A stretch of DNA of 46,315 bases, from NCBI GenBank assembly GCA_013416795.1, contig RQSC01000004.1, positions 161,464 through 207,778 on the forward strand. The letters run 5' to 3'. Made by a program: the position numbers and the translations under genes. The notes under the pieces were generated by a model. It was not told the origin of the DNA. It saw only the letters and a program-made list of their open reading frames with translations, and did not search any database. Source of the DNA: Prasinococcaceae sp. CCMP 1430. Lineage: Eukaryota; Plantae; Prasinodermophyta. The number at the start of each line of letters is the position of its first letter. Position 1 is the stretch's first letter. Of this stretch, positions 1-44,576 are shown piece after piece.

Positions 1-287
1 AACGCCGGGCCGCTCCGCGCAGCGCCGCGCCGGGCCGCGTCGCGCTGGTAGTGGCGGCGCAACCGACGGGAATTGCGCCCGCGGCTGTTTGCGGCTGGGG
101 ACGGCGGAGGTGCCACACCCCGCGGTGTGCGCGGCGAGCGCCGCAGGGAGGCGGGCGGGCACACAGGCACCCCGGTGGTGGAACGGCGGAGGGAGTTGGG
201 AGGAGGCGCACGCGCGATACGTAGGGGGGGAGCTGGAGGCAGCTGTGTGTGTGTAGTGGTGGTGGTGGTGGTGGTGTGTGGGGCAAT

Positions 288-3010
288 ATGGCCGACATAG
301 ACGTGGCATGTGTGGGCGATGCGTGCCCTCGCTTTGACGGCGGGCGCGTGGCAGCCGCCGCGCTGCTACCGACTTCTGGCGGCGGCGGCAGGGGCACGGG
401 CGTGAGCACGCCCGAGCCCGCGCGCCAGTACACTTGGAAGGCGGGCGCACAGCTTCCGCTTGCGCCGCTCGCGGGTATGGCGAGAAGGGCGATCGCCAGG
501 CGGAGTGCACGCAGGCGGGGGGGCACCGTCAAGGCGGCCGCGAGTCCAGGTGAGTGGGAGCGCGCAGAGGAGTGCGTGAGTGAAGGGAGGTTGGACGACG
601 GAGGGAGCAGGGACAGGGCGGTGGCGGTGGCGGCGGTGGTGGAGGCGGCATCGCTTGGACGCCATGTCGTACTTCGTCGGCGCCAAGAACGTCGAGGAGG
701 AGCGCCGCGGGCGCGTAGGTCGCCGGGGATTTGTTCGCAGCCCGCGCGCTGACTTTGGCGCGCACCTGTCCATCGGCGCCGCGGCGCTCACTATCGCCGC
801 CGCCTTCGCGTTGCCCCCAGGGGAAGACGGTGCACTGCTCGCTGTCGCGTTTTCTCGCCAGCTGCTGTTGCCTCAGGCGCTCGGCCTGCAGCACAGTGGC
901 CGTTGGCGATGGCGGTTGGCGCCTTGCGCGCTCCACCTCGGCGCGGACGCCACTCTCCTGCCGCGAGCGCATGCGCGAGCGGTGCGGCAAGGGGAGCGCA
1001 CGCTCGAGATCCAGCCCACCTGCCGCGTGCGGCTCGCCAAGCGCGCGCTCGGCTGTTCTCTGACCTTCCACATGCTTCCGCGGCCGGCATTGGAGCTGAG
1101 CAGGCCGCTCCTACGCCAACCCCCAGCGCCGGCACGGCGCCGAGCAGGACCGCTCGGCGCGGGGGACATCGTGCGCGGCGCGCGCCGGCTGGCGAGCCGC
1201 ATCGCCATCCGGGCGGTCTTGTCACCGCCAGACGACGACAGAACGTACGCGCGCGTGCGCGTGCAACACCCCGCAGGCAACGGGACCGACAAAGGCCGGC
1301 TGCACGACATCGGCTCGCGTGCTGCGCGCGCGCTTCTCCCTGCCGGCGGCATGGCGGTCGCCGCGGGCCCGAGGCTGCGTTTTCATGTCGAGTGGCGCTC
1401 GCCGGAGGACAACATCCGCCTCGGACGCGCGCTCACCGCTGACACGCTCCAGCGAATGGGAGGCCACGGCAACGACCGCGCCCCACACAGCGGTGCGAGT
1501 GCTGCAACGCGCACGCGCGTTGCCAAAGATGGCGTCCTCAATGGCAACCACGTGAGCAACGGCGGGGGTCACAAGATCGAGGCGCAGAGGGCATATTCAG
1601 AAATTGGCGGCAACGCGGGGCAAGAAACCGGGGCACTCTGGGCTGGTGCTCTGCTATCGCTCGCCGCTGAAGTACTGCGACCAGTGGGAATGGCTCTGTC
1701 GAGTGCGCGTGCGTTGGGTGCGGACTCAATCGCGCTCGCGGAGGCACGCGGGATCACGCCCTTCGTGAACGCTGACTCGCGTGTCAACCAAGGGCAGGCG
1801 CCGCGGCGATACTCCGTCTCGGATCTGACCCGTCGCGTTCTCCCTTCGGCACTGCACTTCGACTTCATCCGCTTCGGAAAGACGTTCGAGGGTGGCTCCC
1901 ATGATCACGAAGGTGTCGTGCCCGCGCCCGGCGTGGATGATGCTACGAGCGCCGCGCCGCTCTCGCATGACCTCATCGCGGTTGTAGCGGGGCATTGGAT
2001 CGACCCCTGGGATGAGCCTGGGGCGCCTGGTGAGAGGGAGTTCAATCTCGAGGTCGCGGACAGAGTCGAGAGGCTCCTCAAGGTGTGGCCATAGTCGTGA
2101 TGTGGGCGATTGGCCACTCTTGGCGGTTTGGATTGGGCGCATGGGTGGACGGGTTTGTCGGGAGAGACGAGAGCGCGCGCGTGTGTGGTGGTGATTGCTG
2201 GTGATAGTATTGCCCTGGTGCGCACGCGCGTGCGCATGCTGACCACCCTCGCCTACTGCCGCACACTTCCGTCTATAGGTGGACGGTTGGCGCGTACTCC
2301 GACCGGAGCGTGACGCACCCTCGCTTCGCTGGGAGGACTATCTGCAGTGGGCGGGCGCGCAAAGCAGGCGCGGTGTGCCCGTCCTCGAAATCCACGGGCA
2401 AGGCGCTATGGAGGATGGGCGCTTCTTGCAGGGCGTGCTCGGCACCAGGCGATCGCCGCTCAACGCAGAACTCGCGGAAGAGGTGCGCGCGTGCGCGCGC
2501 TCTGCTCTTGGCGTGGCGTGCTCCCTCGCAGACGCTGCCTCGCGAACGCGCCCGCGTGCGCCTATGCGCGAGCTGACGCACTCGCCCGCGTGCGTGTTGG
2601 GCACCACGCGCACGCCCATTCGCGCGTGCGCAGTTTGGCTTCTTTCCCATGGACTGGCGGGAGCTCGCTCTGCCACGCAAGGGTGGCGTGATTCTGGAGG
2701 CCTTCAACTCAGACGAAGTCCTCGCCATGGGGCCGACAGAGCGTGCGACGCACGCCGACGCAGTGGCCACCAAGGTGAGGCTGCGCTTATGGCATGCGTC
2801 AGATCGCGTGCGCGTGCGAGCTCGTGCACATGCGCACGCTGTCGCGCGGACGCGTTGCTCCCCTGGACACGAGAGTCTGACGTGCGCGCCCATCCGCAGG
2901 TCGTGCTGGCCATTGAACGCGCGAGCATGGATGACAGCTGCCAGACGAGTTTTTGCGAGACCGCTGCAGACCCGACGCCGGAGGAGCGAATCCTCAGGCG
3001 AGGCTGGTGA
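288..3010 (+). CDS. Multi-exon protein (~729 aa) with C-terminal N-acetylmuramoyl-L-alanine amidase (Amidase_3)-like Zn domain
   Basis: Exons 288-549, 611-2082 (617 is an alternative acceptor), 2279-2482, 2634-2774 and 2900-3010 splice in frame with GT-AG sites. Motifs IAVVAGH, GEREFNLEVA..VERLLK, VLEIH and VILEAF give the His/Glu/His/Glu set of Amidase_3. Confidence 0.7.
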
Positions 3011-3159
3011 CAGGGTGCCACCCTCGCTTCGCAACTGCCCCTCGGTAGCGCTCCCGCCTGGTCGCTTGGTTGGGCGGTGCACGCACTGCCCGCGGACGCG
3101 CTCGCGCCGGACGCGTCACGTAAATCGACGTTATTATCGTACAAACATTTCACAGAGTA

Positions 3160-4264
3160 TCAGAGTACCTCGGCGCTCGCACTATGCAGCCGCCGCTGCT
3201 GCCTGCCCTCCTGCCTGCGCCTGCGCCTCGCCAAGCGCCCCACACCGAGCCCCGCGCGCTCGAGCGCCTGGCGGCGCGCGTGCCGCCACGCGCGCTTCCA
3301 CAGCGCGACGATGCACGCGCGGCGCGCCGCCGCCGCACTCGGCCGCGCGTCCGCCCCTAGCGGCGTGGCCGCGTACAGCTCGCCGATCTCGGAGTCGGTC
3401 AGCCAGCGACAGGAGCCCTCTGGCATGCCCTCGTCTGTGAGTGGACCGAAGCGCACCCTGTGCAGGTGCAGCAGCCGGAGCTTGGACCGCGTGCACAGCC
3501 GCCGTATCTGTCGGTTCTTGCCCTCGTTGATGCGAAGGTACAGCTCCGTCGCCCAGCCCCGCTGGTCGCCGTCGGCGGCAGGCGGCCTCTGCCCGGGGCG
3601 CTCTTCATCCGTATCGAGCCTCCTCTGCTCAAGCCTGAGCACCTCCGCCGGCTGCGTGACTTTGCCCTGCACCTCGAGGGGTTCGCTCTGCGGGGGTGGG
3701 CGCGCGGTGTGCGTCAGCGCTCCGCCTCCGCGAGCACTCTGCGCCGCGGGCTGCGCGCCGCGCCCACCCTCGCCAGCGCGCGCCGCGCGCCTCGCCCGCG
3801 CGGCGTTCGTACCAGCCGCATAATCTCCCAGTCGTCGGGCGCCCATCTGCCCCGCAGGGTGAGGCGATACTCCTTGGCGACGTTGGCGGCGGGGTCCTTG
3901 AGCGCCGCGGCCAGGGCCGCGTCGTCTGTCATGAGCATGGTCCCGCTCGTCTCGAAGTCCAGCCGGCCGCTGTGGCCCACGCCCGCAGTCGGAAAGCCGC
4001 GCGCGGCGGCCGTGTCGTAGACATCCCTGCGCGGCGACGACTCGCCCTTCCCCAGGGCCGCGAGGCGCTCGGCGCCGCGCATGCTCAGCACGCGGCGCGG
4101 CTTGACGAGCACGAAGTACCGGAGCTGCCAGCGCGAAGGAAGCTTGCGCGCCAAGTCCCGCGCCCCGCTGCTGTCCCCGCCGCCGCCCGCGCGATGGCCC
4201 TCGGCTCTGCTGCCCTCGCGCGCCCCGCCCTCCGACCCCATGCCGGCCGCGCCGCCGTGGCCGT
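3160..4264 (-). CDS. RNA pseudouridine synthase, RsuA/RluB/E/F family (5' end at ATG 4241 or inside the N-gap)
   Basis: LVKPRRVLS, catalytic GRLDFETSGTMLMTDD, KEYRLT, then intron 3812-3688, then LRINEGKNRQIRRLC..LHLHRVRFGPL. Confidence 0.9.
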
Positions 4265-4823
4265 NNNNNNNNNNNNNNNNNNNNNNNNNNNNNNNNNNNN
4301 NNNNNNNNNNNNNNNNNNNNNNNNNNNNNNNNNNNNNNNNNNNNNNNNNNNNNNNNNNNNNNNNNNNNNNNNNNNNNNNNNNNNNNNNNNNNNNNNNNNN
4401 NNNNNNNNNNNNNNNNNNNNNNNNNNNNNNNNNNNNNNNNNNNNNNNNNNNNNNNNNNNNNNNNNNNNNNNNNNNNNNNNNNNNNNNNNNNNNNNNNNNN
4501 NNNNNNNNNNNNNNNNNNNNNNNNNNNNNNNNNNNNNNNNNNNNNNNNNNNNNNNNNNNNNNNNNNNNNNNNNNNNNNNNNNCGGCGCGCGGGCGTTGAA
4601 CGCGTGGCGCCTGGCGAAGGGCGCTGCGCCCAGCCGCTGCCGCCGCCGCCGAGGGCTTTTGTTCGCGGCGGCCCCGCCGCGCTCGCCACAGTTCTCTCTC
4701 GCGCCGGCCAACTGCTGCGCGGCTGCTGCTTCGCTGCTGCGCGTGTTGTTTCCTACGTGCCGACCCGGGCGACGGCGTCCCCTCAGCGCCAAAGCGACAG
4801 AACATACCCGGCAGATAGACACC

Positions 4824-16118: not shown

Positions 16119-16973
16119 NNNNNNNNNNNNNNNNNNNNNNNNNNNNNNNNNNNNNNNNNNNNNNNNNNNNNNNNNNNNNNNNNNNNNNNNNNNNNNNNNN
16201 NNNNNNNNNNNNNNNNNNNNNNNNNNNNNNNNNNNNNNTATGTTCCCTCTTCTCTACCCCAGAGGCGCTCGCCGCGCTCGCCCCCGCCGGCCGCGCGCGC
16301 GCGCCCGCGCGTCGCAAGCCCCGCAAAAGCAGCCACAGCGTTGTTAGTTTTTTTTTTTTTTTTGGTTCTCCGCTCGGCTCTGGTTCCCTCCCTTTCCCCG
16401 TCGTTCCTTTTTTTGTGCGGTGGGCACTGACTCGCGCATCACACATCGCACGCGCCACCCAACGACGCACCAGCGGCGGCAACGTTCGCCCGCCGTCGGC
16501 ACGACGACCAGCGAAGGCCATCGTCGATCGAGACAAGGGGGCCGGGGCGCGGGCCTGGGTCCGTCGCGGGGTCGCTCGGGGCAACGCAAGGGGCTCCGGC
16601 CGGGGAGACGAGGAGACGGGGGTCCGGCCGGGGGTCCGGGGAAGCGAAACACAAACCCTGAGAACAATGAACCTCAAAGGGGCGGAGCGTCCGCGGCCTC
16701 GCTCGCTGTCGTGTCGTCGAGACGGGGGTCCGAAACCCGCTCGCTCGCTCGCTCGCTCCGCCTGGGCGGCGGGCGATGCGAGATGCGGCGCACGGTCGGA
16801 TGTGCACTGCGATGATGCGAGCCGGCGCCGGCCGGTGCCGGCGGGCGCCTGGTCGCTCCAGCCCTAGTGTCGCTGCCGGGGGCGGGCGCCGCCGTTGCCT
16901 CTGCGCGGCCCCGGTGGCACCGGAAGCGGGCCGCCGCCGCCGCGAAGCGCCGGCGTGCCGCGCCGCTGCCGCG

Positions 16974-21482: not shown

Positions 21483-22103
21483 NNNNNNNNNNNNNNNNNN
21501 NNNNNNNNNNNNNNNNNNNNNNNNNNNNNNNNNNNNNNNNNNNNNNNNNNNNNNNNNNNNNNNNNNNNNNNNNNNNNNNNNNNNNNNNNNNNNNNNNNNN
21601 NNNNNNNNNNNNNNNNNNNNNNNNNNNNNNNNNNNNNNNNNNNNNNNNNNNNNNNNNNNNNNNNNNNNNNNNNNNNNNNNNNNNNNNNNNNNNNNNNNNN
21701 NNNNNNNNNNNNNNNNNNNNNNNNNNNNNNNNNNNNNNNNNNNNNNNNNNNNNNNNNNNNNNNNNNNNNNNNNNNNNNNNNNNNNNNNNNNNNNNNNNNN
21801 NNNNNNNNNNNNNNNNNNNNNNNNNNNNNNNNNNNNNNNNNNNNNNNNNNNNNNNNNNNNNNNNNNNNNNNNNNNNNNNNNNNNNNNNNNNNNNNNNNNN
21901 NNNNNNNNNNNNNNNNNNNNNNNNNNNNNNNNNNNNNNNNNNNNNNNNNNNNNNNNNNNNNNNNNNNNNNNNNNNNNNNNNNNNNNNNNNNNNNNNNNNN
22001 NNNNNNNNNNNNNNNNNNNNNNNNNNNNNNNNNNNNNNNNNNNNNNNNNNNNNNNNNNNNNNNNNNNNNNNNNNNNNNNNNNNNNNNNNNNNNNNNNNNN
22101 NNN

Positions 22104-29340: not shown

Positions 29341-30177
29341 CTACGCCTCGCCCTTGCCAGTCCACTCGGCGACGAAGTGCGCGGCGCCAGGGCATGCGGC
29401 ATCCTCCAGTAGCCCCGCGAGCCTGGTGACCTCATCCTCAGTCCAGGCGCCGCCGTCACGCGCAGCGACGACGCACATGAGCTCGTGTGCGGCCTGCAGC
29501 GCCGCTGCCTCGGGCTCCGGCTGCGTGGCGAGCTCGCCCTCCTCGGCGGCCCTCTCGGCGGCGATGCGCTCAAGCACGCCCTCAGCGGTGACCTCTTCGG
29601 CCGAGCCGTACTGCGCGAGCTCCGCGACACGTCGGAACTCGGAGCCACCGAGCGACCACCACGGCAGGCGCAGCGCCGCGCGCGCCATGTCGCGCGCCTC
29701 GAGCGGCCGGTCGTGCTCAGCGCACACCTCGGCGAGGAACGCGTACGGCCGCGCGAAGCCGGGGAACCACATGCGCTTGGTGGGCAGCTCGGCGGCCGTC
29801 AGGCCGGAGATCTCGTCGCCGCGCGCGAAATGGCCGCGCGCGAGGCCCTCGATGGCGTCGGGGAACTTGCCCACGTGGCGCGTGAGGTAGGCGTCCATGT
29901 GCGGCAGCGCGGCCGCGGCGACGTCGCCCGCGGCGTAGAGCTGCGCGGCGTCGGCGCCCGCGGCGGCCGTAGCGGCGGCGTACGNNNNNNNNNNNNNNNN
30001 NNNNNNNNNNNNNNNNNNNNNNNNNNNNNNNNNNNNNNNNNNNNNNNNNNNNNNNNNNNNNNNNNNNNNNNNNNNNNNNNNNNNNNNNNNNNNNNNNNNN
30101 NNNNNNNNNNNNNNNNNNNNNNNNNNNNNNNNNNNNNNNNNNNNNNNNNNNNNNNNNNNNNNNNNNNNNNNNGCCAT
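29341..30177 (-). CDS. PAB: PROTEIN IN CHLOROPLAST ATPASE BIOGENESIS homolog (middle lost in gap)
   Basis: DAYLTRHVGKFPDAIE....HF.RGD..S......FPGFARPYAF.A......R.LEARD.AR.AL..PWWSLG. Confidence 0.85.
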   Translation of the reverse strand: MXXXXXXXXXXXXXXXXXXXXXXXXXXXXXXXXXXXXXXXXXXXXXXXXXXXXXXXXXXXXXXXXYAAATAAAGADAAQLYAAGDVAAAALPHMDAYLTRHVGKFPDAIEGLARGHFARGDEISGLTAAELPTKRMWFPGFARPYAFLAEVCAEHDRPLEARDMARAALRLPWWSLGGSEFRRVAELAQYGSAEEVTAEGVLERIAAERAAEEGELATQPEPEAAALQAAHELMCVVAARDGGAWTEDEVTRLAGLLEDAACPGAAHFVAEWTGKGEA

Positions 30178-43737: not shown

Positions 43738-44576
43738 GTTTGCCAGCCCGCTCACCAGGCGCGGACTGCGCCCGCGCCCAAACCGGGAGCCCGCCGCCGC
43801 GCCCGCGCCACCGGCCGGCGATCCGAGGCCGCGAAAGGCTCGGCCCTCCTCGCGCTCGCCCCCGCGNNNNNNNNNNNNNNNNNNNNNNNNNNNNNNNNNN
43901 NNNNNNNNNNNNNNNNNNNNNNNNNNNNNNNNNNNNNNNNNNNNNNNNNNNNNNNNNNNNNNNNNNNNNNNNNNNNNNNNNNNNNNNNNNNNNNNNNNNN
44001 NNNNNNNNNNNNNNNNNNNNNNNNNNNNNNNNNNNNNNNNNNNNNNNNNNNNNNNNNNNNNNNNNNNNNNNNNNNNNNNNNNNNNNNNNNNNNNNNNNNN
44101 NNNNNNNNNNNNNNNNNNNNNNNNNNNNNNNNNNNNNNNNNNNNNNNNNNNNNNNNNNNNNNNNNNNNNNNNNNNNNNNNNNNNNNNNNNNNNNNNNNNN
44201 NNNNNNNNNNNNNNNNNNNNNNNNNNNNNNNNNNNNNNNNNNNNNNNNNNNNNNNNNNNNNNNNNNNNNNNNNNNNNNNNNNNNNNNNNNNNNNNNNNNN
44301 NNNNNNNNNNNNNNNNNNNNNNNNNNNNNNNNNNNNNNNNNNNNNNNNNNNNNNNNNNNNNNNNNNNNNNNNNNNNNNNNNNNNNNNNNNNNNNNNNNNN
44401 NNNNNNNNNNNNNNNNNNNNNNNNNNNNNNNNNNNNNNNNNNNNNNNNNNNNNNNNNNNNNNNNNNNNNNNNNNNNNNNNNNNNNNNNNNNNNNNNNNNN
44501 NNNNNNNNNNNNNNNNNNNNNNNNNNNNNNNNNNNNNNNNNNNNNNNNNNNNNNNNNNNNNNNNNNNNNNNNNNNN

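What the first reader, a model, noticed from the sequence alone, without database searches (positions are those of the whole stretch)
1975..3010. Intron-containing nuclear gene with an intact bacterial cell-wall amidase (Amidase_3) domain: candidate plastid peptidoglycan hydrolase
Seen: the domain is split over four exons and is invisible in the ORF track. Spliced, it reads IAVVAGH-x12-EREFNLEVADRVERLLK...VLEIHGQG...LAEEFGFFPMDWRELALPRKGGVILEAFN. Known: Amidase_3 enzymes (AmiA/B/C, CwlV) use His, Glu and His as Zn ligands plus a catalytic Glu, in this order. From memory, the 'LEIH...FG.[YF]P...R..L..PR.G..ILE' variant resembles a compact marine Synechococcus/Prochlorococcus family. Some early green algae and mosses retain plastid peptidoglycan genes, but amidases are not among the commonly listed ones as far as I know. 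Inference: an endosymbiont-derived or transferred amidase that remodels plastid murein during division, or that digests bacterial walls.
Basis: partly seen in the sequence, partly recalled or inferred. Interest (0 to 1): 0.85.

Follow-up and report, generated by a model that had tools for sequence, protein, structure and literature searches.

The report
Membrane-barrel-anchored chloroplast wall amidase candidate
A spliced, expressed nuclear gene of a marine green picoalga encodes a very diverged bacterial-type wall-cutting enzyme joined to a predicted membrane barrel. The same protein is found in the named green algae and early land plants that keep a bacterial wall around their chloroplasts, so it is a testable candidate for the amidase not yet reported for that wall.

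Summary
The gene runs from 288 to 3010 on the + strand, with 5 exons encoding 659 aa. All four GT..AG introns are joined in RNA-derived contigs from three studies.

The last ~175 aa, spread over four exons, are a very diverged Amidase_3-type domain:
- No Pfam hit at threshold.
- A 36-sequence family profile hits solved Amidase_3 enzymes (E 7e-5).
- A model of the Prasinococcus homologue matches 14 of them at Z 13-15.
- The His, Glu, His and Glu that align to Amidase_3 conserved motifs are invariant or nearly so in the family.

It is a conserved all-beta region of about 12 amphipathic strands whose only structural matches are transmembrane beta-barrels (OmpG, TamA, Sam50, Toc75). There is no transit peptide.

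The family is small: 120 hits among 1.84 billion representatives. Every named carrier is a green-lineage organism, and most are reported to keep plastid peptidoglycan genes. I saw no angiosperm.

The nearest prokaryotic relatives are distant. They sit beside or fused to M23 peptidases in cyanophage baseplates and conjugation-like modules.

Best reading (0.55): an outer-envelope-anchored amidase acting on plastid murein.

Earlier scan notes report other peptidoglycan genes in this genome, including a different, canonical amidase, but not this gene.

The parts
245..287 (+). (GT)n/(GGT)n microsatellite directly upstream of the start codon (5' UTR)
   Evidence: Read. Read laying reports reads cut at the repeat 200-284, and the X1 transcript contig starts at 285.
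288..549 (+). Exon 1 (coding). Holds ATG 288, the conserved N-terminal C-x4-C motif (309-326) and the start of the beta-rich region (about 432 onward).
   Evidence: 55% identical to the N-terminus of P0002. The 549/821 joint is seen in an X1 contig. An in-frame stop lies upstream of 249.
550..820 (+). Intron 1 (271 nt, GT..AG, phase 1)
   Evidence: Skipped in an X1 contig and present in DNA run X11.
821..2082 (+). Exon 2. Most of the predicted beta-barrel region (to about 1887) with lineage-specific loop insertions. From about 1975 it holds the first part of the amidase domain, with His 1993-1995 and Glu 2032-2034.
   Evidence: BLASTP to P0003 gives two blocks, E 6e-21 and 9e-25. The barrel prediction is on homologue P0003. 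Invariant G-H and E are shown.
2083..2278 (+). Intron 2 (196 nt, GT..AG, phase 0)
   Evidence: Skipped in contigs of X1, X2 and X3.
2279..2482 (+). Exon 3, middle of the amidase domain, with the LEIHGQG motif (Glu 2387-2389, His 2393-2395)
2483..2633 (+). Intron 3 (151 nt, GT..AG, phase 0)
   Evidence: Skipped in contigs of X1, X2 and X3.
2634..2774 (+). Exon 4. Holds FGFFPMDW..PRKGGVILEAFN with the predicted catalytic Glu at 2697-2699.
2775..2899 (+). Intron 4 (125 nt, GT..AG, phase 0)
   Evidence: Skipped in contigs of X1, X2 and X3.
2900..3010 (+). Exon 5 coding part. Holds the last helix of the domain, the C-terminal C-x4-C motif (2939-2956) and stop TGA 3008-3010.
   Evidence: The C-x4-C tail (GCSxSGC in many chlorophyte and metagenomic members) is seen.
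3011..3109 (+). 3' UTR (at least to here)
   Evidence: Transcript contigs end at 3050 (X1), 3097 (X2) and 3109 (X3).

Best explanation
The gene encodes a two-part protein of 659 aa.

C-terminal part: a very diverged but intact member of the Amidase_3 (N-acetylmuramoyl-L-alanine amidase) superfamily. This is a Zn hydrolase that cuts the stem peptide from the glycan strand of peptidoglycan.

N-terminal part: a conserved, roughly 12-stranded amphipathic all-beta region predicted to form a transmembrane beta-barrel.

In eukaryotes such barrels are known only in the outer membranes of plastids and mitochondria. They are made without a cleavable transit peptide, and this protein has none.

The most likely mechanism is as follows. 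The barrel anchors the protein in the plastid outer envelope. The amidase domain hangs into the intermembrane space, an OmpA-like layout. There it trims or splits the plastid murein layer from its outer face during growth and division, possibly together with the M23/LytM protein DipM.

Shown: splicing and expression; the fold and conserved active-site residues; the family's distribution.

Inferred: membrane insertion, which membrane, topology, substrate, and the partnership with DipM.
For: 1. Gene model and expression. All four introns are joined in RNA-derived contigs: three in three runs from three studies, intron 1 in one run. The DNA run is colinear.

2. Amidase fold.
- Foldseek on the domain model gives its top ~36 hits to Amidase_3 structures, apart from one FGase-type entry, 2odf.
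- In the full-length model the domain has pLDDT 90-97.
- VIA-align gives Z 13-15, rmsd about 3 A over 150-160 residues, to 14 Amidase_3 structures. The next fold scores Z 9.5.

3. Sequence link. The 36-sequence profile hits 3czx at E 6.7e-5, 4rn7 at 1.9e-4, CD27L at 8e-4 and LytH at 4e-3, over the whole domain. The family's GH, E, E-x-H and E fall on the matching conserved motifs of those enzymes. These residues are invariant or nearly so in 36-39 sequences.

4. Distant relatives are peptidoglycan enzymes. They are fused to M23, SLT, glucosaminidase or LysM domains. Or they lie next to an M23 gene in a Microcystis cyanophage baseplate module and in FtsK/TraB-type modules.

5. Barrel. Residues 41-281 of the model match only transmembrane barrels: OmpG Z 9.9, TamA 9.4, Sam50 9.0, Toc75 8.0, Tom40 7.5. 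Family-averaged hydropathy alternates along the strands. Protein-language-model neighbours with a name are all outer-membrane barrel families, at weak scores of 0.76-0.77.

6. No transit peptide. A conserved C-x4-C motif sits at residues ~8-25 in all full-length members.

7. Distribution.
- Named carriers: Prasinococcus, Pycnococcus/Pseudoscourfieldia, Picocystis, Chloropicon, Tetraselmis striata, Mesostigma, Chlorokybus, Spirogloea, Mesotaenium, Closterium, Netrium, Riccia, Ceratodon, Diphasiastrum, Adiantum and Ginkgo.
- Papers report full peptidoglycan toolkits for P. coloniale, Picocystis, Chloropicon, T. striata, streptophyte algae, bryophytes and ferns.

8. The tree follows the species groups, which suggests vertical descent.
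Against: - No localisation or activity data exist.
- The barrel rests on one AlphaFold model from a shallow alignment (about 19 full-length rows; pTM 0.48). Its Z values of 8-10 are only just above the tool's stated background of 7-8.
- Barrel closure and strand number could not be checked.
- Orientation is not predictable. Some metagenomic members carry a roughly 400-aa Lys/Glu-rich coiled coil between the beta region and the amidase, which is awkward for a narrow intermembrane space.
- The domain fails Pfam's threshold.
- Absence from angiosperms and core chlorophytes rests on named hits only, not on a systematic profile.
- Ginkgo and Pycnococcus were not checked against published peptidoglycan gene lists.
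Confidence: 0.55

Rival explanations
1. It is the same enzyme, but it does not act on the intact murein layer from the outer envelope. The catalytic domain faces the cytosol, or the beta region is a soluble or peripheral domain. The protein then cleaves released muropeptides, a recycling or clearing role like bacterial AmpD or AmiD.
For: There is no transit peptide. Some members carry long coiled-coil spacers. Earlier scan notes report recycling-type genes (AnmK, an NlpC/P60 peptidase) in this genome (unchecked). Barrel topology is not predictable.
Against: All structural matches of the N-terminal half are transmembrane barrels. Barrels of bacterial ancestry normally keep soluble terminal domains on the periplasm/intermembrane side (established knowledge for OmpA, BamA, Sam50 and Toc75). 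Compact Amidase_3 enzymes usually act on polymeric murein.
Confidence: 0.2
2. The domain keeps the Zn-amidase chemistry but has been retargeted to a non-peptidoglycan amide. Possible substrates are a gamma-glutamyl or N-acyl compound, as in the related PghP and N-formylglutamate amidohydrolase folds.
For: The sequence is extremely diverged from canonical Amidase_3, with no Pfam hit. PghP (3a9l, Z 9.5) and an FGase-type entry (2odf) also appear in the fold lists. Family-specific invariant motifs (WxxYLxW, MDWR, PRxGG) have no known role.
Against: Amidase_3 structures score far above those folds, Z 13-15 against 9.5. Distant relatives are always combined with peptidoglycan hydrolase domains or genes. 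The distribution tracks peptidoglycan-retaining lineages.
Confidence: 0.1
3. It is a lysin against bacteria, used for defence or feeding and acting on foreign cell walls.
For: Amidase_3 domains are common in endolysins. The nearest detectable relatives include phage baseplate lysins.
Against: No signal peptide. A predicted organelle-type barrel. Presence in mosses, ferns, lycophytes and Ginkgo. Descent that follows the species tree. A distribution matching plastid peptidoglycan rather than phagotrophy.
Confidence: 0.05

Closest known systems
Compact Amidase_3 catalytic domains (CwlV 1jwq, CD27L 3qay, PlyPSA 1xov, Neisseria 3czx, C. difficile 4rn7)
   Same: The same alpha/beta fold (Z 13-15). 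Similar size of about 170 aa. His-Glu-His plus Glu in the same order and aligned to the same conserved motifs. An E-x-H motif as in 3czx and CD27L.
   Different: Below Pfam's threshold. Carries its own invariant motifs (GHWID, WxxYLxW, EIHGQG, MDWR, PRxGG). Encoded by a spliced eukaryotic nuclear gene. Fused to a predicted membrane barrel.
Division amidases AmiA/AmiB/AmiC of Gram-negative bacteria and cyanobacterial AmiC2
   Same: The presumed job of splitting murein at the outer face during constriction, and the catalytic fold (4bin, 8c0j, 8c2o, 5emi). An association with M23/LytM proteins.
   Different: No AMIN domain and no Tat or Sec signal. No long insert where the autoinhibitory helix would lie (not examined in 3D). 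Anchored by a barrel instead of being soluble in the periplasm.
OmpA-type architecture (N-terminal outer-membrane barrel plus C-terminal periplasmic peptidoglycan-directed domain); the outer-membrane-anchored amidase AmiD
   Same: The layout of a membrane barrel followed by a soluble wall-directed domain. The idea of a murein amidase tethered to the outer membrane (from established knowledge).
   Different: OmpA's C-domain binds murein and does not cut it, and its barrel has 8 strands. AmiD is a lipoprotein with the unrelated Amidase_2 fold. No sequence relation was found.
DipM (LysM + M23), the characterised plastid peptidoglycan hydrolase of Cyanophora and moss (PMC4015805)
   Same: A nuclear-encoded murein hydrolase whose distribution follows the plastid peptidoglycan genes. 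Presumed intermembrane-space action at division.
   Different: A different fold and a different bond cut. That study searched photosynthetic eukaryotes for Ami amidases, DipM/NlpD, EnvC and LytE and reports only DipM homologues.
Microcystis phage Ma-LMM01 gp094 baseplate protein and the amidase genes of FtsK/TraB-type modules (P0077, P0083, P0085, P0087)
   Same: The nearest detectable prokaryote-world relatives of the domain, with the same G-H, E, E-I-H and E invariants. Always next to an M23 peptidase gene.
   Different: Only 23-35% identical. Carry a phage hub domain, or a Tat signal plus glucosaminidase domain, instead of the beta-barrel region. Belong to mobile elements.

Membership tests
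Amidase_3 (Pfam PF01520, N-acetylmuramoyl-L-alanine amidase) | Scores at or above the Pfam gathering threshold (27 bits) | tested here: not met
   The window's exons give no hit. Intact homologues score 12.6-15.7 bits, and distant relatives up to 21.2 bits.
Amidase_3 (Pfam PF01520, N-acetylmuramoyl-L-alanine amidase) | Three-layer alpha/beta fold of solved Amidase_3 enzymes | tested here: met
   The model of homologue P0003 gives Z 13-15, rmsd about 3 A over 146-162 residues, to 14 Amidase_3 entries. Foldseek E values go down to 1.8e-5. This was tested on the homologue, not on the joined window protein.
Amidase_3 (Pfam PF01520, N-acetylmuramoyl-L-alanine amidase) | Zn ligands His, Glu, His in this order | tested here: met
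   The family profile aligns GH, GxxE and E-x-H with the corresponding conserved motifs of 3czx, 4rn7 and 3qay. That these are the Zn ligands rests on knowledge of those structures. They are invariant or nearly so in 36-39 members. Window codons: 1993-1995, 2032-2034, 2393-2395.
Amidase_3 (Pfam PF01520, N-acetylmuramoyl-L-alanine amidase) | Catalytic Glu on the late beta-strand | tested here: met
   An invariant Glu (ILEAFN; window 2697-2699) aligns with the E of 'vfEpF', 'liEcG' and 'liEsF' in the solved enzymes.
Amidase_3 (Pfam PF01520, N-acetylmuramoyl-L-alanine amidase) | Hydrolyses the MurNAc-L-Ala bond of peptidoglycan | not testable with these tools
   Needs recombinant protein on sacculi or muropeptides.
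Transmembrane beta-barrel of organelle or bacterial outer membranes | Antiparallel all-beta region matching solved membrane barrels | tested here: inconclusive
   The model has 12 strands in residues 49-275, with pLDDT mostly 70-90. All matches for residues 41-281 are membrane barrels, Z 7.3-9.9. Those scores lie near the tool's background, and closure could not be inspected.
Transmembrane beta-barrel of organelle or bacterial outer membranes | Alternating hydrophobic and polar residues along the strands | tested here: met
   Hydropathy averaged over 11 full-length members alternates in most predicted strands.
Transmembrane beta-barrel of organelle or bacterial outer membranes | Integral insertion in the plastid outer envelope | not testable with these tools
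   Needs fractionation, carbonate extraction or imaging.
Plastid peptidoglycan machinery of Viridiplantae | Occurs with the Mur/MraY/PBP toolkit and is lost with it | tested here: inconclusive
   All named carriers are green-lineage. Most are explicitly listed as toolkit holders. No angiosperm was seen among the named hits. This is not a systematic presence/absence matrix.
Plastid peptidoglycan machinery of Viridiplantae | N-terminal transit peptide, as in the Mur enzymes | tested here: not met
   The N-terminus is acidic and carries a conserved C-x4-C motif within the first ~25 residues in all members. This is compatible with outer-envelope barrel proteins, which lack transit peptides.

The most novel reading that the evidence does not exclude
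This is the so far unreported murein amidase of green plastids. It is a protein family ancestral to all Viridiplantae. An organelle outer-membrane beta-barrel tethers a cyanobacteria-world (phage or mobile-element type) Amidase_3 domain in the intermembrane space. There it splits the plastid peptidoglycan from outside, probably in concert with the M23 protein DipM. It was lost each time the plastid wall was lost.
Probability: 0.45. Interest if true: 0.85.

Novelty: new variant of a known kind. Interest (0 to 1): 0.78.

Why it matters
Plastid peptidoglycan in green algae, bryophytes, ferns and some seed plants is established mainly from its synthesis genes. The hydrolases named in the papers I could read are DipM, MltB and VanY. 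A motif search for Ami amidases, DipM/NlpD, EnvC and LytE in photosynthetic eukaryotes reported only DipM homologues.

This gene gives three things:
- a conserved and expressed amidase candidate, present in tractable models' relatives (mosses, liverworts);
- a structural idea for how the outer envelope could be coupled to the wall;
- a simple knock-out, localisation and sacculus-assay programme to test both.

It also shows that a family with only 120 detectable relatives among 1.84 billion representative proteins escaped domain annotation.

Tried and rejected
- Exon-by-exon Pfam and NCBIfam scans gave nothing.
- A profile of six close homologues found no solved relative. Only the wider 36-sequence profile did.
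- Motif scans for relatives found nothing in 185,579 prokaryotic species genomes or in IMG/VR.
- A source's name for one member, 'C2 NT-type domain-containing protein', found no support in Pfam or in the fold search. I reject it.
- 'Stand-alone compact' members (P0015, P0048) turned out to be pieces or neighbours of eukaryotic genes.
- PHROGs gave only weak hits: baseplate and endolysin families, E about 1e-4.
- The Utsunomiya 2021 paper on moss hydrolases is not held. Its content (MltB, VanY) is known to me only second-hand.
Intact natural homologues (P0002, P0003 and others) served instead.
- Complex prediction was not used, because the report does not rest on a binding claim.
Full report
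**Observation**

The window is about 70% G+C. Between 288 and 3010 on the + strand it carries a five-exon gene: 288-549, 821-2082, 2279-2482, 2634-2774 and 2900-3010, with TGA at 3008-3010. That is 1980 coding bases, or 659 aa.

Every intron is GT..AG. Laying public runs on 200-3300 showed contigs that join exactly these exon ends:
- 549/821 in X1
- 2082/2279, 2482/2634 and 2774/2900 in X1, X2 and X3

X1 and X2 behave like transcriptomes of the source organism, and X3 is a marine metatranscriptome. A DNA run (X11) is colinear with the window. The transcripts end between 3050 and 3109.

Full-length homologues from transcriptome projects cross the same junctions without gaps. Exons 1 and 2 align to their N-terminal parts.

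Intact natural homologues (P0002, P0003 and others) stood in for the joined protein.

**Organism**

The tools hide the source. Several things fit Prasinoderma coloniale or a very close relative, as earlier scan notes say:
- G+C of about 70%, against 69.8% published for P. coloniale.
- The closest named homologue is from Prasinococcus capsulatus.
- There is a 99%-identical Logan ORF.

I did not prove the assignment.

**The C-terminal domain**

Pfam and NCBIfam find nothing in the exons. In intact homologues they give only sub-threshold Amidase_3 hints, 12.6-15.7 bits against a cut-off of 27.

An exhaustive HMMER search of 1.84 billion representative proteins with a six-sequence profile returned only 120 proteins. 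The family is therefore small and is not linked to the huge Amidase_3 family at that level.

A wider 36-sequence profile (A3) does reach solved Amidase_3 enzymes over the whole domain:
- 3czx, E 6.7e-5
- 4rn7, E 1.9e-4
- CD27L, E 8e-4
- LytH, E 4e-3

Nine of the eleven listed matches are Amidase_3. In these alignments the family's GH, GxxE, E-x-H and late Glu fall on the corresponding conserved motifs of those enzymes. I take these to be the Zn ligands and the catalytic Glu, from knowledge of those structures. The residues are invariant or nearly so across 36-39 members.

AlphaFold models of the Prasinococcus homologue agree:
- The domain alone has pLDDT 71. Its top ~36 Foldseek hits are Amidase_3, apart from one FGase-type entry, 2odf.
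- In the full-length model the domain has pLDDT 90-97.
- That model matches 14 Amidase_3 structures at Z 13-15 and rmsd about 3 A. The next fold (PghP) scores Z 9.5.

The domain therefore works like, and descends from, Amidase_3, although it fails the Pfam membership score.

**The N-terminal half**

All full-length members share a conserved region before the amidase. Its features include a C-x4-C motif within the first ~25 residues, YxWK, LPxxLGLxxxGRWRW and LLPxPxL. It has no Pfam match.

In the model it forms 12 long strands (residues 49-275), mostly at pLDDT 70-90. In a search of 48,161 chains, every match to residues 41-281 is a transmembrane beta-barrel:
- OmpG, Z 9.9
- TamA, Z 9.4
- CdiB, BamA and FhaC
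- Sam50, Z 9.0
- Toc75, Z 8.0
- Tom40, Z 7.5

Hydropathy averaged over the family alternates residue by residue along the strands. The nearest named language-model neighbours are outer-membrane barrel families, at weak scores.

The Z values lie only a little above the tool's background, and I could not inspect barrel closure. The barrel is a prediction.

No member has a transit-peptide-like N-terminus. Outer-envelope barrel proteins do not need one.

**Distribution**

Named carriers are all Viridiplantae:
- Prasinodermophyta: the window, Prasinococcus
- Chlorophyta: Pycnococcus/Pseudoscourfieldia, Picocystis, Chloropicon, Tetraselmis striata
- Streptophyte algae: Mesostigma, Chlorokybus, Spirogloea, Mesotaenium, Closterium, Netrium
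- Bryophytes: Riccia, Ceratodon
- Vascular plants: Diphasiastrum, two Adiantum species, Ginkgo

Published surveys list complete peptidoglycan toolkits for P. coloniale, Micromonas pusilla, Picocystis, Nephroselmis, Chloropicon primus, Ulva mutabilis, T. striata, streptophyte algae, bryophytes and ferns. The overlap among chlorophytes is striking. I saw no angiosperm or core-chlorophyte model alga among named hits, but this is not a systematic matrix.

A quick maximum-likelihood tree of the domain recovers several expected groups:
- the Prasinodermophyta pair, support 99
- Mesostigma + Chlorokybus, support 95
- Zygnematophyceae + embryophytes, support 88

This is as expected for vertical descent from an early green ancestor. 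Deep nodes are unresolved.

Some metagenomic members of about 1100 aa insert a long Lys/Glu-rich coiled coil between the beta region and the amidase.

**Relatives outside eukaryotes**

These are few and distant.
- Multi-domain proteins combine the domain with M23, SLT, glucosaminidase or LysM. One lies on a phage-like 97-kb contig.
- A group with Tat-like signals, some with a glucosaminidase domain, always follows an M23 peptidase gene and an FtsK/TraB-like translocase.
- One such contig also carries nblA, and its TrpRS is closest to cyanobacterial clusters.
- Among 50,697 phage records, the only tblastn hits are Microcystis cyanophages. There the domain ends a baseplate hub protein (gp094 of Ma-LMM01) next to an M23 endopeptidase (gp095). 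It has the same invariant residues.
- The best structural match in the ESM Atlas is a Pfam-less cyanobacterial 'amidase family' cluster, TM 0.73.

The domain lineage thus belongs to the cyanobacterial cell-wall world and is repeatedly coupled to M23 enzymes. Neither an endosymbiotic nor a later transfer origin can be shown.

**Mechanism**

The best-supported reading has these steps:
1. The barrel inserts in the plastid outer envelope.
2. By the usual biogenesis logic of bacterial-type barrels, the soluble C-terminal domain stays on the intermembrane-space side, as in OmpA.
3. The Zn amidase removes stem peptides from plastid murein at its outer face. This step is needed for splitting or thinning during division or growth.

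The recurrent M23 pairing suggests cooperation with DipM. DipM is the known plastid M23 hydrolase (PMC4015805), and a LysM-M23 gene is noted elsewhere in this genome (unchecked).

Rival readings are a cytosol-facing or soluble recycling amidase, a retargeted non-murein amidase, and an antibacterial lysin. The evidence for and against each is given in the rival-explanations section.

**Literature**

I found no paper describing a plastid amidase of this kind.
- Miyagishima et al. 2014 searched photosynthetic eukaryotes for Ami amidases, DipM/NlpD, EnvC and LytE and report only DipM homologues.
- The moss hydrolases reported later are MltB and VanY, which I know only second-hand.
- Earlier notes of this scan describe other peptidoglycan genes of this genome, including a different, canonical Amidase_3 gene, but not this one.

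**Verdict**

This is a real, expressed gene. The amidase assignment is sound at superfamily level (about 0.9). The outer-envelope anchoring and the plastid-murein role are well-motivated inferences (about 0.55 for the full mechanism). It is a new architectural and phylogenetic variant of a known enzyme kind, and it is directly testable in moss or liverwort.

Noticed in passing
window 657-700 (inside intron 1): A stretch of about 40 nt is covered by very abundant short contigs in the RNA-like runs (summed depth about 32,000 in X1, 665 in X2). These contigs continue into unrelated sequence on both sides. It looks like a short segment shared with highly expressed transcripts or a repeat, not part of this mRNA.
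   Followed up: no
window 3160-4264 and beyond the gap, minus strand: The convergent neighbour encodes an RsuA/RluA-type pseudouridine synthase (PseudoU_synth_2, E 4e-9 for 3714-4262). Its stop lies only about 50-100 nt from the 3' end of the amidase transcript. The gene is interrupted by an assembly gap at 4265-4582.
   Followed up: partly
window 309-326 and 2939-2956; family alignments A3/A4: Two C-x4-C motifs are present. One is at the extreme N-terminus (CVGxxC, nearly all members). One is near the C-terminus (SCQTSFC here, GCSxSGC in many chlorophyte and metagenomic members, absent in land plants). If both termini lie on the same side of a barrel, they could form a metal site or disulfides. 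This is unexplained.
   Followed up: no
P0030, P0043 (marine metagenome members, about 1100 aa): Long forms insert a roughly 400-aa Lys/Glu-rich coiled coil between the N-terminal beta region and the amidase domain. One source mislabels fragments as 'CheA'.
   Followed up: partly
L002, L007, L008-L010 (metagenome contigs): A conserved module recurs: several small unknown genes, an FtsK/TraB-like translocase, two small genes, an M23 peptidase, then the amidase (with or without a glucosaminidase domain). On one contig it sits beside nblA and housekeeping genes. It looks like an undescribed conjugation-type element of cyanobacteria.
   Followed up: partly
P0050 (871 aa, unknown source): A fragment of the family's last exons is embedded in a Ty3-type retrotransposon polyprotein (capsid and integrase hits). 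It is probably a chimeric gene call or a captured exon.
   Followed up: no
window 4265-4582, 16119-16238, 21483-22103, 29985-30172, 43867-44576: Runs of N (assembly gaps) are present. The window comes from a scaffolded draft.
   Followed up: no
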